Positions 14,157 to 63,923 of a stretch of 64,000 nt of DNA are shown piece after piece. The notes under the pieces are model-generated. The model searched no databases, was not told the origin of the DNA, and saw only the letters and a program-made list of their open reading frames with translations. The stretch's first letter is position 1. Each line of letters opens with the position of its first letter. The stretch is taken from sequence record LR756508.1; one strand, given 5' to 3'. Made by a program: the position numbers and the translations under genes.

Positions 14157-14227
14157 TGCTTGGTAGCTCATTCTGGTTGAGCGTCGGCTCCTAAAGCCGA
14201 AGGTAGGTTCAATCCCTAACCGAGCAT
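14157..14227 (+). tRNA. tRNA with CTA anticodon (amber suppressor candidate; alternatively aberrant Arg-CCT)
   Basis: Acceptor TGCTTGG/CCGAGCA, D arm GCTC/GAGC, anticodon stem TCGGC/GCCGA around TCCTAAA, T arm GTAGG-TTCAATC-CCTAA; 2-nt variable region. Confidence 0.6.
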
Positions 14228-14232
14228 CATAA

Positions 14233-59826: not shown

Positions 59827-60072
59827 ATGGGCAAAGCTCCATTTTCACCACTAGCTAGACGTCTTTTTTCTGATAGAGAAACAGGCCATAAGATTGTGAA
59901 TGCGGCTCGAAAGGGGGGTGGGACGATTGAAGCTCACGACGGAAAAAAATATAAAGTTCGACCCGCTTCAAGATACAACCCAAAAGAACACGAAGAAGAT
60001 AACAATGATGAGTCTTTTTGGAGTAAACTTAAAAACTGCTTCTCTCCTCACATCAAATTCTCCGAAAGTTGA
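59827..60072 (+). CDS. hypothetical protein
   Basis: 81-aa ORF. Confidence 0.6.
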   Translation: MGKAPFSPLARRLFSDRETGHKIVNAARKGGGTIEAHDGKKYKVRPASRYNPKEHEEDNNDESFWSKLKNCFSPHIKFSES

Positions 60073-60219
60073 GTAACAGAAAATTCAGATCGAAGAGCCT
60101 GCTTACAACTACCCTCATCCTGCAGATCTTTGAACTACTGGTTAAGTTCTGCTTTGAGAGTGAATTTCTAAGAATATCTGAATATTTATAGACAGATTTT
60201 AAAATAAACTGCTGTTTTC

Positions 60220-60327
60220 ATGAGCCGATTTCATACGCTGCCACTTATTAATATTCTCAACGCCAACCTAGCACTGGCGAATAACAATCCTATATCTCTT
60301 TCTGGCAGTTCGGCTCTTGACGCTTAA
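60220..60327 (+). CDS. candidate Asn/Leu-rich attenuator leader peptide (35 aa)
   Basis: MSRFHTLPLINILNANLALANNNPISLSGSSALDA*; overlaps pairing segments 1 and 2. Confidence 0.5.
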   Translation: MSRFHTLPLINILNANLALANNNPISLSGSSALDA

Positions 60328-60390
60328 AACCTCATAATTATTGTTGTTTATAAGCCGAGCTGCCGAGAGGCGGTTCGGCTTTTGCTTTTG
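60222..60390 (+). promoter_or_regulatory. attenuator-like 1:2 / 2:3 / 3:4 structure with terminator hairpin
   Basis: Seg1 GAGCCGA..GCTGCCA, seg2 TGGCAGTTCGGCTC, seg3 AAGCCGAGCTGCC, seg4 GGCGGTTCGGCTT plus TTGCTTTTG. Confidence 0.6.
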
Positions 60391-60408
60391 CTTCAAACTT
60401 TCAAAACC

Positions 60409-60741
60409 ATGACAGAATATACTTTAAAAAGAGTAGAAGGCTTGTCTGAAGAGACTGAAACTGAAACTGTTGAGTATGAAGGACTAATTTACCTTGTTGA
60501 TATGCCGAAAAGCAGCCTGCCACTTTCAGATAAAATTAAGCTTCGAATATATTCAAATTTTGTTCGGAGTGAATTCTATAGAAAGCATGAAGATGTAAAC
60601 ACTAGCGAGTATGATGAAACAATGATCACTAACCTGTTGTATGTATGGTGGAATAAAAAAGATGGAGTAATTGAATATGACGTGATCTCAAAAGATTTTG
60701 AAATTTTGGACACAAACTGGTTTCATTTTGGTGGCGAATAG
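60409..60741 (+). CDS. hypothetical protein
   Basis: ATG 60409; ORF track starts at 60382. Confidence 0.6.
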   Translation: MTEYTLKRVEGLSEETETETVEYEGLIYLVDMPKSSLPLSDKIKLRIYSNFVRSEFYRKHEDVNTSEYDETMITNLLYVWWNKKDGVIEYDVISKDFEILDTNWFHFGGE

Positions 60742-60778
60742 TGATTCCGATTCGGTTTCTTGAACTCTAGTTTCTGGT

Positions 60779-61039
60779 ATGCTCAAGCCTTTTGAACATG
60801 GTTATGTATTGTCCCGCATTGACCAGGAGATTTTAAAGGAACAAGAAAAAGGAGGTTTCGTCAATAGAAGAAAAAAGGAACTGCAAGACCGAAAAGATGT
60901 AATGCAAATAAAGTTGAGTGAATACTTTGCTGAACGAATTGCATTCTCAACTTACGTTGAGGCTATAAGAGACTCCGTTGATAAAGTGAAGAAAGCAGGA
61001 AGTATAGGAACTTTTGATGAATTGAAAAAAGAGTTGTAA
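60779..61039 (+). CDS. hypothetical protein
   Basis: 86-aa ORF. Confidence 0.55.
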   Translation: MLKPFEHGYVLSRIDQEILKEQEKGGFVNRRKKELQDRKDVMQIKLSEYFAERIAFSTYVEAIRDSVDKVKKAGSIGTFDELKKEL

Positions 61040-61050
61040 CTTCATAAGAT

Positions 61051-61137
61051 GCCCGAGTGACGGAATAAGGAATACGTACGAGGCCGAGATTCTCGTGGCT
61101 GAGATAAGCCGTGTGGGTTCGAGTCCCTCCTCGGGCA
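61051..61137 (+). tRNA. tRNA-Leu(GAG)
   Basis: GCCCGAG/CTCGGGC, CGAGG-CCGAGAT-TCTCG, long variable arm GGCT/AGCC. Confidence 0.88.
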
Positions 61138-61157
61138 CTTCAAACTTTAAAAACTAT

Positions 61158-61230
61158 TCCTCGGTAATTCAACTGGTAGAATGCCGCACTGTTAATGCGG
61201 TCGTTGCTGATTCAAGTTCAGCCCGAGGAG
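61158..61230 (+). tRNA. tRNA-Asn(GTT)
   Basis: TCCTCGG/CCGAGGA, CCGCA-CTGTTAA-TGCGG. Confidence 0.9.
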
Positions 61231-61276
61231 CTTAATTTAATTGATAAAAAGAAAGCGTGAAGAAACTAAAACACGG

Positions 61277-61305
61277 TTGACAATCAACCCTCTCTTTTTT
61301 AAACT
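61277..61305 (+). promoter_or_regulatory. sigma70-like promoter upstream of the large ncRNA
   Basis: TTGACA-N17-TAAACT. Confidence 0.55.
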
Positions 61306-61311
61306 AAGTAT

Positions 61312-61940
61312 TCCACTAGTTGAGGAAGAGAGACTTGAAAAAAGATTCTTTGACATAATGCGAAAAGAGGCAGTAGGTCCGAGCAAGGGACAGGACCAAA
61401 AGCAGGCGCAGGTCTCCGTTCAGATCGGTTCGAATCCGATTTAGCCATGAGCCCTATAGGTAACGAGACTTGGCGGTTCGATTCCGCAACTGTTGGTAGC
61501 GACAAAACTGCTGGTTTCGTGCTGGCAAGTTGACGAAGCACGCACCACTGCGCTCACACAGTCACCTGAAAAGAGCGTAGTTTCCGACTGGATAGCTTAT
61601 CTGGTCGAGAGAGGTTACTGAAGCCATAGGTTTTCAAAAACACTGTGAGTTGAAACCCTCTATAAAAAGTTAATGGCCGGGTTGAAGGAGAAGTCGCCCT
61701 CGAAGCGGCTGCATGGTCAGGTTCAAATTCCACCCAACCCGGCTGGCCCGTTGCGGCCTACCATCGGATTTCAATCAGGATCGGCTGTGAAGCGTCTGAT
61801 CAACATGTGAAAGAAGAACCCCAATTGAAGTTCGGTCAGCAAACGCAACAAAATGGACTGCGAACTTGGAGGCTTTATAGGCTACGGTTCGAATCCGTTT
61901 TTCTGGCAAAAAAGAGGTTCAACTCCTCTCCAGTCCACAT
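61312..61940 (+). ncRNA. GOLLD-like giant structured RNA
   Basis: About 600 nt, GC-elevated, no convincing ORF; five T-loop-like hairpins; AAAACTGCTG..CGTGC and GTAGTT..CCGAC..GATAG..GGTCGAGAGA segments recalled from GOLLD; TGGACTG/CAGTCCA closing stem; follows tRNAs. Confidence 0.62.
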
Positions 61941-62149
61941 TCATTCAGAACCTATTATTTTACGTTTGATGAGTAGTATCTCGTGTTTTTCCAATTCATT
62001 AAACTATATTATGAAGCTGTTTCGACTTCGTCCGAATCCGAGTAGAGATTTAAAACGAATAGTAAAGGAAATATCTGCGGCCCATTTCCAGCTACGACAT
62101 TAAAACTAGATCCGTCGTTTGCGCAGAATTAGAGGAGGAGGTTCGTAAG

Positions 62150-62350
62150 ATGATTGAAGAAAACGCTGGTGATGAGATCTACGCCACCTATGGAAAGTGG
62201 TCTAACGGTGACACAGTTCGTGAAGAGCTGGAAGAAGACGAGTTTGTTCACTACGAAGGAGTCTGGACAAATGAAAACCTCGTTGAGTGCGTTGAACTTA
62301 GCGGAGAAGGTGAAGAAGGAATCGTTTTGAGTAGCTATAAACGCGAGTAA
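62150..62350 (+). CDS. hypothetical acidic protein
   Basis: 66-aa ORF; may be the 3' part of a frameshifted gene from ATG 62010. Confidence 0.5.
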   Translation: MIEENAGDEIYATYGKWSNGDTVREELEEDEFVHYEGVWTNENLVECVELSGEGEEGIVLSSYKRE

Positions 62351-62619
62351 AACACCGAAACATAATTTGGTTCCAATTTAAAGTCGATCATTAGTAATTG
62401 ACGTTTTGCAGTAAAACTAATAACTTTTTAAACAAATAATCTACATTCCAACCCCATGAAAACATTTTATCTCGTACAAGACAGGCAATCTTACGACTTA
62501 CTTTTTCAACCGAAAGATGGGCATACAAACCTTCCAGAAGTAACCATGAAAAACCTTCCACCCTCGGAGCTTGAGAATAATATCGTGTAGAGTTTGAGAA
62601 GGGCTTATATTCGGTTTTA

Positions 62620-63923
62620 ACCGAGTGATATATAAACCCTCTCTCATGATTCTGCACTGCAGAACCTTATAGAGGTACGACTGTTACTGACACTATCATG
62701 ACACACGAGATCAAGCGCACATATCAGTATCGGATTTATCCGAACGAGGGGCAGAGGCAAGAACTCGCTCGCACGTTCGGATGTAGCCGATGGGTGTATA
62801 ACTGGGCGCTTGAGACCAAAACGAAGGCGTACTACCAGGATGAAAAGTCGCTTTCGTTCACCGATCTCAGCAGCCGTCTCACTTCCAAGAAGAAAGAAGA
62901 GGAGACGGAGTGGCTTTCGGAGGTCAGTGCGGTCACGCTCCAACAGAGCCTTCGTAACCTGAATCAAGCGTTCATTAACTTCTTTGAGGGGCGGGCCGAG
63001 TATCCGTCCTTCAAATCGAAGAAGGGCGATCAGACAGCTCGATACGTCGGAAGCTCCTTCGACACCCGAAAGGAAAATGGAAAACGGAAGCTCTGGCTCT
63101 CGAAGATGCCAGGACTGGTTAATATTCGATGGTCGAGGGAGCTTCCTTCCGAGCCGAGTAGCTGCACCGTCACGAAAAACGCGGCGGGGCAGTACCACGT
63201 CTGCTTCGTCTGCAGCGAAGAGATCCAGACTCTCCCGAGAGTCAACGGAGAGGATGGCGATCTTCGGTTTGTGGGCGTAGACCTCGGCATAGAGAGCCTT
63301 TTGACGCTTTCGACTGGCGAGAAAGTCGGGAATCCGCGCTGGTTCGAAAACAAATATGATCGGCTTCGCAGAGAGCAACAGAAGCTCTCTCGAAAAGAGA
63401 AAGGATCGAACAACTGGGTGCGGCAGAAAAAACGTGTAGCGAAAGTCCACCAGCGCATTCAGGATCGGCGCAAAGACTTCATCGAGAAGCTGACCACACG
63501 ACTTGTCGAAAGCTGGGATGTGATCGTCGTTGAGGACCTTTCGGTGAAGGCGATGCAGCAGAACGAGAGTCTTGCTCGTCACATGGGACAAGCAGGATGG
63601 GGACAGATTGTCCGTCGCCTTAGAGACAAGTGCAGGTGGTACGGTCGCACGCTTGTGATCGCCGACAAGTGGTTCCCTTCCAGCCAGCGCTGTTCTGAAT
63701 GTGGAAATGTCGATGACAAGAAGCCGCTTGACGTTCGAGATTGGACGTGTCCTGAATGTGGAGAACATCACGACAGAGACATCAATGCAGCGAGGAATCT
63801 CAGTAGGGTCGGGCAGATCCGACTTCAAGCACCTGGAGACCTGGGTAAACCCGACGCGTTTGAGGTCGTCGGTTCCGGTCGATGAATGGTAGAATCCCTT
63901 GGATTTATCCTGGGGAGTGTCAA
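62620..63923 (+). mobile_element. IS200/IS605-family (IS1341-like) element, TnpB only
   Basis: Right-end hairpin TCCCTTGG-ATTTAT-CCTGGGGA, then GTGTCAA ending at 63923; left end uncertain (hairpin TTCTGC/GCAGAA at 62650-62664). Confidence 0.8.
62698..63885 (+). CDS. tnpB: TnpB RNA-guided endonuclease
   Basis: YRIYPN HTH, GVDLG, VEDL, CSECG..CPECG, DRDINAARN; RuvC D-E-D intact. Confidence 0.95.
   Translation: MTHEIKRTYQYRIYPNEGQRQELARTFGCSRWVYNWALETKTKAYYQDEKSLSFTDLSSRLTSKKKEEETEWLSEVSAVTLQQSLRNLNQAFINFFEGRAEYPSFKSKKGDQTARYVGSSFDTRKENGKRKLWLSKMPGLVNIRWSRELPSEPSSCTVTKNAAGQYHVCFVCSEEIQTLPRVNGEDGDLRFVGVDLGIESLLTLSTGEKVGNPRWFENKYDRLRREQQKLSRKEKGSNNWVRQKKRVAKVHQRIQDRRKDFIEKLTTRLVESWDVIVVEDLSVKAMQQNESLARHMGQAGWGQIVRRLRDKCRWYGRTLVIADKWFPSSQRCSECGNVDDKKPLDVRDWTCPECGEHHDRDINAARNLSRVGQIRLQAPGDLGKPDAFEVVGSGR

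What the first reader, a model, noticed from the sequence alone, without database searches (positions are those of the whole stretch)
60220..61230. trp-style attenuator with an Asn/Leu-rich leader upstream of tRNA-Leu and tRNA-Asn
Seen: a 35-codon ORF (6 Asn including AAT-AAC-AAT at 60280-60288; 7 Leu) overlaps segment 1 (60222-60243) and segment 2 (60303-60316). Segment 2 can pair with segment 1 or with segment 3 (60352-60364). Segments 3 and 4 form a 13-bp GAGA-loop hairpin followed by a T-rich tract. The Asn run ends about 15 nt before segment 2, and the stop codon lies just after segment 2. Established: this is the geometry of ribosome-mediated attenuators such as trp and his. Downstream lie two ORFs, then tRNA-Leu(GAG) and tRNA-Asn(GTT), which read the enriched codons. 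Inference: the phage may sense depletion of host Asn/Leu tRNA and switch on its replacement tRNAs.
Basis: partly seen in the sequence, partly recalled or inferred. Interest (0 to 1): 0.85.

Follow-up and report, generated by a model that had tools for sequence, protein, structure and literature searches.

The report
Conserved switchable terminator before phage tRNAs
A huge uncultured phage carries a conserved RNA switch, overlapped by a tiny open reading frame, that can stop or pass transcription into two unknown genes and its own tRNA genes. The idea that it senses asparagine or leucine tRNA shortage remains unproven.

Summary
A 35-codon ORF (60220-60327) overlaps segments 1 and 2. Segment 2 can pair with segment 1 or segment 3, and segments 3 and 4 form a 13-bp GNRA-loop terminator followed by a U-rich tract. 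The complementarities far exceed chance, and two other strong terminators in the window lack them.

The window is part of LR756508.1, a 484-kb uncultured phage. Eight related lineages keep the 274-nt element (60135-60408), while the adjacent spacer has diverged to 36% identity. Six of eight stem substitutions keep pairing on the + strand. The terminator and antiterminator folds are nearly isoenergetic in the six full-length lineages folded.

The small ORF is intact in all lineages, with an ATG or GTG start, a TAA stop and one in-frame 3-nt deletion. The coding signal is weak: P=0.12 for intactness, and pN/pS equals a shifted-frame control.

The Asn run is not placed as in trp or his. A ribosome stalled there leaves segment 1 free, and only codons 1-13 favour read-through. 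NNN is NIN or SNN in three lineages. tRNA-Asn is missing from three lineages, whereas tRNA-Leu(GAG) is always present.

Verdict: a real, previously undescribed phage attenuator, plausibly ribosome-mediated. The sensing of Asn/Leu tRNA is unproven.

The parts
60135..60219 (+). Conserved upstream block (candidate promoter and/or 5' UTR); invariant TTAAGTT at 60142-48
   Evidence: 71% pairwise identity with invariant blocks, against 36% for the adjacent spacer 60073-60134. No convincing sigma-70 or Bacteroidota-type promoter could be assigned. The motif is not enriched elsewhere in the window.
60220..60327 (+). Leader ORF of 35 codons (34 in L010)
   Evidence: Open in all lineages, with an ATG start in 5, a GTG start in 3, and a TAA stop. 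One in-frame 3-nt deletion. pN/pS is 0.52, the same as a shifted-frame control. P(intact by chance)=0.117.
60222..60243 (+). Segment 1 (1a 60222-28, 8-nt variable bulge, 1b 60237-43); it contains the start codon's G and codons 1-8
   Evidence: The paired blocks are invariant in the first five lineages and the bulge is variable. L011 and L014 each have one disruptive change in 1b.
60280..60288 (+). Asn codons 21-23 (AAT AAC AAT), in the loop between segments 1 and 2
   Evidence: NNN in 5 lineages, NIN in 2, SNN in 1. A stall here does not mask segment 1.
60303..60316 (+). Segment 2, which pairs with segment 1 (anti-antiterminator) or segment 3 (antiterminator)
   Evidence: 94% identity. Duplex energies and shuffles. 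The changes T>C at 60309 and C>T at 60311 keep both pairings.
60325..60327 (+). Leader stop codon TAA within the conserved TTAAAAC
   Evidence: The stop is TAA in the nine loci with readable sequence here (it is masked by N in L014), and the block is near-invariant, while the three preceding codons vary.
60352..60381 (+). Segments 3 and 4: a 13-bp terminator hairpin with a GNRA loop (GAGA or GAAA), -24 kcal/mol
   Evidence: 95% identity. Substitutions at 60353, 60358 and 60371 all give G.U pairs.
60382..60395 (+). U-rich tract TTGCTTTTGCTT (60382-60393); it ends 15 nt before the ORF110 start codon
60409..60741 (+). ORF110, the first regulated gene; function unknown, and the family is confined to this phage clade
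   Evidence: The AlphaFold model has low confidence (pLDDT 46).
60779..61039 (+). ORF86, a small charged protein (helical by inspection of the sequence) of unknown function
   Evidence: The 37-44 nt spacer before it is unconserved and has no hairpin.
61051..61138 (+). tRNA-Leu(GAG), starting 11 nt after the ORF86 stop
   Evidence: A tRNA-Leu(GAG) follows ORF86 in every lineage with downstream sequence. In L003 the aligned copy is replaced by a shorter 76-nt gene a little further downstream.
61158..61231 (+). tRNA-Asn(GTT)
   Evidence: Present only in the window, L006 and L012/L013.

Best explanation
The 274-nt element at 60135-60408 is a transcription attenuator. It is a conditional intrinsic terminator in the leader of a small phage operon: ORF110, ORF86, tRNA-Leu(GAG), and in some lineages tRNA-Asn(GTT).

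Shown:
- The RNA can adopt two mutually exclusive, nearly isoenergetic folds.
- One fold is 1:2 plus 3:4, which forms the terminator.
- The other is 2:3, optionally nested inside 1:4, which leaves no terminator.
- The element is under strong purifying selection on the + strand.

Inferred:
- The choice between the folds is most likely made by a ribosome translating the 34-35-codon leader ORF.
- With no ribosome, 1:2 forms first and transcription terminates.
- A ribosome that reaches the TAA covers 60310-16, so 3:4 forms and transcription terminates.
- A ribosome held within roughly codons 1-13 (S R F x T L P L I N I L/I) masks segment 1, so segment 2 captures segment 3 and RNA polymerase reads through.
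- The Asn21-23 run could contribute only indirectly. One route is a trailing ribosome queued about 10 codons behind the stalled one, which would sit on segment 1b.

Which codons are sensed, and whether the signal is tRNA-Asn, tRNA-Leu or general translational distress, is not established.
For: Structure and significance.

Position:
- The terminator lies 280 nt after the previous gene and 27 nt before the next start codon.
- The two other strong terminators in the window directly follow genes and have no antiterminator.

Conservation:
- Segments 2 and 3-4 are 94-95% identical. Flanking genes are 83-84% identical and the neutral spacer is 36% identical.
- Six of eight stem substitutions keep pairing, by G.U in five cases and by a gained or retained Watson-Crick pair in the others. 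They do so only on the + strand.
- The loop stays GNRA.

Bistability: the two global folds differ by -3.3 to +5.8 kcal/mol in six lineages.

ORF evidence:
- The ORF is intact in all lineages.
- The start codon is only ever ATG or GTG, although the 8 nt before it vary freely.
- TAA is fixed.
- The only indel inside the ORF is 3 nt, whereas the spacer after the stop has a 1-nt indel.
- Unpaired ORF positions vary at 52%, 35% and 54% by codon position, against 70-88% in the flanking unpaired RNA.

Operon evidence:
- The phage does not use Shine-Dalgarno sites (5 of 43 genes), so the missing SD is uninformative.
- There is no conserved hairpin or promoter between ORF110, ORF86 and tRNA-Leu.
Against: - pN/pS of the leader (0.52) equals the +1 shifted-frame control (0.53).
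- ORF intactness alone has P=0.12.
- Synonymous divergence is half that of real genes (0.25 against 0.55). This shows RNA-level constraint in the loop that a pure leader-peptide model does not need.
- The start codon sits at the base of the -27 kcal/mol 1:2 helix, so initiation must beat folding.
- The most striking codon run (Asn21-23) is outside the antitermination window of the footprint model. It is not better conserved than other codons.
- No transcription start site, 3' end or ribosome data exist.
Confidence: 0.45

Rival explanations
1. The same three helices form, but the switch is not set by a ribosome. The 1:2 helix would be the closing stem (P1) of a 95-nt sensor domain that binds a small ligand, a protein (possibly ORF110 or ORF86, acting as an autoregulator) or an RNA. 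Binding stabilises 1:2 and so favours the terminator. The ORF would be incidental.
For: - The P1, antiterminator, terminator layout is also that of OFF riboswitches and protein-dependent attenuators (established knowledge).
- Nucleotides in the 59-nt loop are conserved at synonymous sites (pS 0.25 against 0.55).
- Invariant blocks include CTTATT and CTGGCGAATA.
- pN/pS is the same as in a shifted frame.
- The start codon is buried in helix 1:2.
Against: - There is no Rfam match even at E<=10.
- The loop is AU-rich with almost no conserved internal structure. The single 5-bp mini-hairpin is broken in L006.
- This model does not explain the ATG/GTG-only start, the fixed TAA, the in-frame deletion or the lower variability inside the ORF than just outside it.
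- ORF110 and ORF86 show no RNA-binding family or fold.
Confidence: 0.25
2. The hairpin is a constitutive (leaky) terminator, or the 3' end of a small non-coding RNA of about 180 nt transcribed from 60135-60219. Segments 1 and 2 would be an old duplicate of the hairpin. The alternative pairing would be a by-product, and downstream genes would be expressed by fixed read-through.
For: - Segment 1 resembles segment 3 and segment 2 resembles segment 4, as a duplication would produce.
- Many 5'-UTR attenuators also yield stable small RNAs (established knowledge).
- An unrelated GC-rich contig carries the same hairpin alone.
Against: - Segments 1 and 2 and the near-equal energies of both folds are maintained in eight lineages, while neutral DNA next to them has diverged beyond alignment.
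- Segment 2 is as conserved as the terminator itself.
- ORF110 has no room for a promoter of its own after the terminator (14-27 nt).
Confidence: 0.15
3. The ORF encodes a functional 35-aa peptide, and the hairpins are just its mRNA structure plus its terminator.
For: - Residues 1-23 are fairly conserved (MSRFxTLPLINIxxANLALANxN).
- All replacements in codons 11-18 are conservative, and none hits a second codon position.
Against: - pN/pS is 0.52 against 0.12-0.16 in neighbouring genes, and equals a shifted frame.
- No gene caller called the ORF in any relative.
- There is no Pfam or PHROG hit.
- This model does not explain the conserved 2:3 complementarity.
Confidence: 0.08
4. The repeated 12-mers are DNA operator half-sites for a phage repressor and not RNA helices.
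For: The motif AGCCGA(N)CTGCC occurs four times in alternating orientation.
Against: - Six of the eight substitutions in the stems are transitions, and those six keep RNA pairing on the + strand. Most do so as G.U, while breaking DNA symmetry.
- A GNRA loop and a U-rich tract follow.
- Half-sites 1 and 2 lie 59 nt apart, and site 1 is interrupted by 8 nt.
Confidence: 0.03

Closest known systems
Leader-peptide transcription attenuators of amino-acid operons (E. coli trp, his, leu, thr, pheA, ilv)
   Same: - A short leader ORF.
- Helices 1:2, 2:3 and 3:4 with mutually exclusive pairing.
- An intrinsic terminator with a U tract directly before the first structural gene.
- A stop codon placed so that a terminating ribosome covers part of segment 2.
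- Termination as the default both without translation and with smooth translation.
   Different: - The start codon lies inside segment 1.
- The conspicuous codon run (Asn21-23) lies in the 59-nt loop and not in or just before segment 1, so a ribosome stalled there does not mask segment 1.
- The leader is long (35 codons), and its sequence is more conserved than the putative control codons.
- Segments 1 and 4 are complementary, giving a nested second global fold.
- The regulated genes are two unknown ORFs plus tRNA genes of a phage, not a biosynthetic operon.
- There is no match to the Rfam leader families.
OFF-type transcriptional riboswitches and protein-dependent attenuators (for example TRAP at trp or PyrR at pyr in Bacillus)
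   Same: A 5' sensor domain whose closing helix competes with an antiterminator, which in turn competes with a terminator.
   Different: There is no recognisable aptamer, little conserved structure inside the domain, and no repeated protein-binding triplets. A conserved ORF exactly spans the domain.
T-box leaders (sensing of uncharged tRNA)
   Same: Both would link tRNA status to read-through of a terminator.
   Different: There is no T-box sequence, no specifier-loop architecture and no bulged antiterminator. Rfam gives no hit at E<=10. T-box leaders control synthetase, transporter and biosynthesis genes, not tRNA genes.
Phage tRNA clusters thought to offset codon bias or tRNA-targeting host defences (T4, T5, huge phages)
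   Same: The tRNA genes are phage-encoded and embedded among small ORFs of unknown function.
   Different: Searches of the held literature found no described case in which such tRNAs sit behind a leader-ORF attenuator. This is absence of evidence within that library only.

Membership tests
Ribosome-mediated (leader-peptide) attenuator, trp/his class | An intrinsic terminator (GC-rich hairpin plus U tract) in the 5' leader, directly before the regulated genes | tested here: met
   A 13-bp hairpin of -24 kcal/mol followed by a U-rich tract, 27 nt before the ORF110 ATG. Conserved at 95%.
Ribosome-mediated (leader-peptide) attenuator, trp/his class | An antiterminator (2:3) that is mutually exclusive with the terminator | tested here: met
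   12 contiguous pairs, -23.7 kcal/mol, 0 of 500 shuffles. Maintained in all lineages.
Ribosome-mediated (leader-peptide) attenuator, trp/his class | An anti-antiterminator or pause helix (1:2) | tested here: met
   7+7 bp with an 8-nt bulge, -21.7 kcal/mol, 0 of 500 shuffles. The paired blocks are conserved and the bulge is variable. L011 and L014 each have one disruptive change.
Ribosome-mediated (leader-peptide) attenuator, trp/his class | A short leader ORF with a usable start codon, conserved among relatives | tested here: inconclusive
   The ORF is intact in 8 lineages, with ATG/GTG only, a fixed TAA and an in-frame 3-nt deletion. However, P(intact)=0.117, pN/pS equals the shifted frame, and the start codon is paired in helix 1:2.
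Ribosome-mediated (leader-peptide) attenuator, trp/his class | A run of control codons that is the best-conserved part of the leader peptide | tested here: not met
   NNN occurs in 5 lineages, NIN in 2 and SNN in 1. Asn11 changes to Asp and Asn14 to His in some lineages. Asn codons vary at 39%, against 42% overall, and LALA (codons 17-20) is better conserved.
Ribosome-mediated (leader-peptide) attenuator, trp/his class | Control codons placed so that the stalled ribosome masks segment 1 but leaves segment 2 free | tested here: not met
   In the footprint model, an A site at codons 21-23 gives 1:2 plus 3:4 (P about 0.8-1.0). Only codons 1-13 give 2:3. The model ignores steric effects and queued ribosomes.
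Ribosome-mediated (leader-peptide) attenuator, trp/his class | A stop codon placed so that a terminating ribosome blocks segment 2 | tested here: met
   A ribosome with TAA in the A site covers about 60310-60336, which is the 3' half of segment 2. The terminator probability is then 1.0.
Ribosome-mediated (leader-peptide) attenuator, trp/his class | Regulated genes tied to the sensed amino acid | tested here: inconclusive
   tRNA-Leu(GAG) follows in every lineage. tRNA-Asn(GTT) follows in the window, L006 and L012/13 only, and does not track NNN. Leu enrichment is not significant.
Ribosome-mediated (leader-peptide) attenuator, trp/his class | Read-through responds to translation of the leader or to charged-tRNA supply | not testable with these tools
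   This needs reporter, Term-seq or ribosome-profiling experiments.
Rfam leader, T-box and riboswitch families | A match to a curated covariance model | tested here: not met
   Nothing appears at gathering score in the window. Nothing relevant appears at E<=10 in 59900-62700.

The most novel reading that the evidence does not exclude
A huge phage uses a leader-ORF attenuator as a sensor of tRNA supply. When ribosomes stall on Asn and/or CUY-Leu codons of the leader, for example after host anticodon nucleases or starvation deplete those tRNAs, transcription reads through into the phage's own tRNA-Leu(GAG) and tRNA-Asn(GTT) and two accessory proteins. That would be a self-regulated tRNA back-up circuit.
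Probability: 0.12. Interest if true: 0.85.

Novelty: new variant of a known kind. Interest (0 to 1): 0.55.

Why it matters
Phage tRNA genes are usually treated as constitutively expressed cargo. A conserved, bistable attenuator in front of a tRNA-containing operon would show that a phage regulates its tRNA supply. If the switch is ribosome-driven, that supply would respond to the state of translation in the infected cell. This bears on how huge phages cope with codon mismatch and with tRNA-cleaving defences.

Independently of the signal, the element is a compact four-segment RNA switch with no Rfam family. It comes from a lineage that does not use Shine-Dalgarno sites and whose likely host belongs to the Bacteroidota/Rhodothermota group. 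Ribosome-mediated attenuation has been little studied in that group.

Tried and rejected
Searches for more relatives or copies:
- Relatives in IMG/VR, by protein and by the exact hairpin: none.
- Relatives in metagenome contigs by protein pattern: none.
- Hairpin pattern in metagenome and genome collections: one unrelated GC-rich contig (L008) with the same hairpin and no segments 1 or 2, judged coincidental. There was nothing in the genomes.
- Profile search of 1.84 billion representatives with ORF110: only its own cluster, so no distant relatives are available for covariation.
- Paralogous copies in LR756508 by blastn: none.

Function of the downstream genes:
- Structure prediction of ORF110 gave pLDDT 46, so it was not used for a fold search.
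- PDB, Pfam, PHROG and NCBIfam searches of ORF110, ORF86, ORF82 and ORF134 found nothing.

Promoter assignment:
- No promoter could be assigned in 60135-60219. GGTTAAGTTCT is not enriched in the window, and no convincing -35/-10 or Bacteroidota -33/-7 match was seen.
- The sigma-70-like site at 61022-61050 ends at tRNA position +1 and is not conserved.

Ideas tested and dropped:
- A link between NNN and the presence of tRNA-Asn looked possible with five lineages. It was broken by L012/L013.
- The idea that N/H/D changes preserve a class of codons read by queuosine tRNAs was dropped, because NAY codons are not enriched relative to the proteome.
- An extension of helix 1:2 across the start codon (A-U to G-C in L001) was not consistent in the other lineages.
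Full report
**1. What is there**

- A 35-codon ORF runs from 60220 to 60327 and encodes MSRFHTLPLINILNANLALANNNPISLSGSSALDA.
- Segment 1 consists of two blocks, GAGCCGA (60222-28) and GCTGCCA (60237-43), separated by an 8-nt bulge.
- Segment 2 (TGGCAGTTCGGCTC, 60303-16) pairs with both blocks.
- Segment 2 is also complementary over 12 contiguous positions to segment 3 (60353-64).
- Segments 3 and 4 form a 13-bp hairpin with a GAGA loop, followed by TTGCTTTTGCTT.

The features are well beyond chance.
- The region folds to -55.7 kcal/mol with z = -4.55, and none of 200 shuffles folds as well.
- Taken separately, the 1:2 domain is -27.3 kcal/mol, 2:3 is -22.8 and 3:4 is -24.0.
- The 2:3 and 1:2 duplexes were matched by 0 of 500 shuffled upstream sequences.
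- The two other strong + strand terminators in the window (about 4794 and about 34655, each right after a gene) have no such partner.
- The hairpin is unique in the window.

**2. Where it comes from**

The window is identical to LR756508.1, an unannotated 484,177-bp "uncultured phage".
- All genes around the site are on the + strand.
- Only 5 of 43 gene starts have a Shine-Dalgarno-like motif, which is below the 19% background. The missing SD before the leader ORF is therefore uninformative.
- A TnpB gene at 62698-63885 is 87% identical to one in a 55-57% GC contig of a Longimonas MAG (Rhodothermota, FCB group).
- This is a hint to the host, and it fits SD-independent initiation.

**3. Comparative evidence**

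The downstream 110-aa ORF and the upstream 82-aa ORF each led to syntenic contigs.
- These gave eight distinct lineages of the leader: the window, L001/2, L003/4, L005/12/13, L006, L010, L011 and L014 (the last two are partial).
- L010 and L014 contain runs of N, which were left as they are.

Conservation by region:

| Region | Pairwise identity |
|---|---|
| Spacer 60073-60134 | 36% |
| Upstream block 60135-60219 | 71% |
| Leader ORF | 84% |
| Segment 2 | 94% |
| Segments 3-4 | 95% |
| Flanking genes | 83-84% (strong third-position bias) |

- The element at 60135-60408 is therefore under strong selection.
- The ORF110-ORF86 spacer, by contrast, is unconserved.

Stem substitutions:
- Pairing-compatible changes are 60237 G>A, 60309 T>C, 60311 C>T, 60353 A>G, 60358 A>G and 60371 C>T.
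- Each keeps or improves pairing in every helix it takes part in. They do so only on the + strand, where G.U pairs are allowed.
- Two changes in block 1b are disruptive (L011 60238 C>G; L014 60243 A>C).
- The loop is GAGA or GAAA, so it stays GNRA.
- There is no full compensatory double change, so the support is by conservation and wobble compatibility, not by covariation.

Bistability:
- Because segment 1 resembles segment 3 and segment 2 resembles segment 4, a second global fold exists, with 2:3 nested inside 1:4.
- In six lineages the two folds differ by only -3.3 to +5.8 kcal/mol, on a scale of about -52 to -56.

**4. Is it an attenuator?**

- The terminator lies 280 nt after the previous stop codon. 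Its stem ends 27 nt, and its U-rich tract about 15 nt, before the ORF110 ATG.
- ORF110 therefore cannot have its own promoter after the terminator.
- Expression of ORF110, ORF86 and the tRNAs that follow (gaps of 37 nt and 11 nt) must pass through this hairpin. The alternative is an internal promoter, which I could not exclude.
- The sigma-70-like site at 61022-61050 ends at tRNA position +1 and is not conserved.
- Together with the conserved antiterminator and anti-antiterminator, this makes a conditional terminator the best reading. I put that at about 0.7-0.75, summing the ribosome-driven and factor-driven versions.

**5. Is it ribosome-mediated?**

In favour:
- The ORF is open in all lineages and keeps the same stop codon.
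- The first codon is ATG in five lineages and GTG in three, and never anything else. The eight nucleotides before it vary freely.
- TTAAAAC, which contains the stop codon, is invariant, while the three codons before it vary.
- The only indel inside the ORF is 3 nt (L010, codon 13). The spacer after the stop carries a 1-nt indel.
- Unpaired positions inside the ORF vary less (52%, 35% and 54% by codon position) than unpaired positions just outside it (70% before the start, 88% after the stop).

Against:
- Placing the observed substitutions at random leaves the ORF intact in 11.7% of trials.
- pN/pS is 0.52, against 0.12-0.16 for neighbouring genes, and equals a +1 shifted control at 0.53.
- Synonymous divergence is half that of real genes, so the loop is also constrained as RNA.
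- The start codon sits at the base of helix 1:2.

I rate translation as more likely than not, but unproven.

**6. Is the geometry that of trp or his?**

Only in part.
- In trp the control codons lie in segment 1 (established knowledge), so the stalled ribosome hides it.
- Here I masked a 27-nt footprint at each codon and refolded.
- With the A site at codons 1-13, the antiterminator 2:3 dominates. Its probability is 0.67-1.0 before segment 4 emerges.
- At codons 16-23, which include the Asn run, 1:2 re-forms and the terminator follows.
- From codon 26 to the stop, segment 2 is covered and the terminator forms.
- The Asn21-23 run could act only indirectly. A second ribosome queued about 10 codons behind would sit on block 1b. 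This is inference and was not tested.
- The codons inside the direct window are S R F x T L P L I N I (L/I). They include Leu9 CTT and, in two lineages, Leu13 CTC, both read by tRNA-Leu(GAG).

**7. Are Asn and Leu sensed?**

- Six Asn is unusual for the composition (P=0.00015 for Asn; P=0.002 for any two-codon amino acid). Seven Leu is not unusual (P=0.21), and neither is a run of three identical residues (P=0.17).
- Relatives have 3-6 Asn.
- The triplet at codons 21-23 is NNN in five lineages, NIN in two and SNN in one.
- Asn11 is Asp in one lineage, and Asn14 is His in most.
- Asn codons are no better conserved than the rest.
- tRNA-Leu(GAG) follows ORF86 in every lineage with downstream sequence.
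- tRNA-Asn(GTT) is present in the window, L006 and L012/13. It is absent from L001, L003 and L005.
- L012/13 combine a NIN leader with tRNA-Asn.
- The proposed circuit, sensing Asn/Leu tRNA depletion and switching on replacements, is therefore possible but has no specific support.

**8. Comparison with known systems**

- There is no Rfam family match at gathering score, and nothing relevant at E<=10.
- Literature searches found no phage attenuator in front of tRNA genes.
- ORF110 and ORF86 have no detectable family or fold, and ORF110 is confined to this clade.
- The element works like a leader-peptide attenuator or an OFF riboswitch.
- It fails two defining tests of the trp/his class: the placement of the control codons and their conservation.
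- I therefore file it as a new variant of a known kind, not as a member of that class.

**9. Verdict**

- The best explanation is a conserved bistable attenuator, probably read by a ribosome on the leader ORF (confidence 0.45). The sensed signal is unresolved.
- Interest is 0.55.

Noticed in passing
window 61345-61945 (+); L006:2530-3088: A roughly 600-nt ORF-free, GC-richer stretch lies right after tRNA-Leu and tRNA-Asn. It is about 95% identical between the window and L006, although neighbouring genes are only about 84% identical, and L006 has a 69-nt insertion. By eye it contains three or four T-arm-like hairpins (GGTTCGAATCC or GGTTCGATTCC). ARAGORN calls no tRNA there, Rfam gives only an 18-bit tRNA hit at 61855-61937, and there is no similar DNA in the phage collection. 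It is a candidate large structured RNA or a string of tRNA-like modules. Its position next to phage tRNAs recalls GOLLD and ROOL RNAs, but it matches neither.
   Followed up: partly
window 62698-63885 (+); L003:2017-3309 (-); L005:6520-7734 (+): IS605-family TnpB genes occupy different positions in related phages, so the elements appear to be mobile within the clade. The window's copy is 87% identical to one in a Longimonas (Rhodothermota) MAG, and its region has 49% GC against about 38% for the phage. This is a hint to the host.
   Followed up: partly
window 14157-14228 (+): A tRNA with anticodon CTA, called tRNA-Pyl by ARAGORN, is a potential amber suppressor. It raises the possibility that part of this phage uses TAG as a sense codon. 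ORF calls elsewhere in the window were not re-examined under that code.
   Followed up: no
window, all + strand gene starts: Shine-Dalgarno motifs are essentially absent (5 of 43 starts, below the 19% background). By eye, the sequences upstream of the starts are A-rich instead.
   Followed up: partly
L003:4639-4838: In L003 the start of the usual 88-nt tRNA-Leu(GAG) is still recognisable, but it is followed by unrelated sequence and then a different 76-nt tRNA-Leu(GAG). The tRNA gene appears to have been replaced.
   Followed up: no
L008:150-190: An unrelated GC-rich metagenome contig carries an almost identical terminator hairpin (GAAGCCGAGCTGCCGAAAGGTGGTTCGGCTTTTT) without segments 1 or 2. 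It is probably a coincidence.
   Followed up: partly
window 61232-61305: A 70-nt insertion relative to L006 lies right after tRNA-Asn. It carries a small hairpin plus T-run (61275-61289) and a TTGACA-17-TAAACT promoter-like site. It may be a window-specific boundary of a transcription unit.
   Followed up: no
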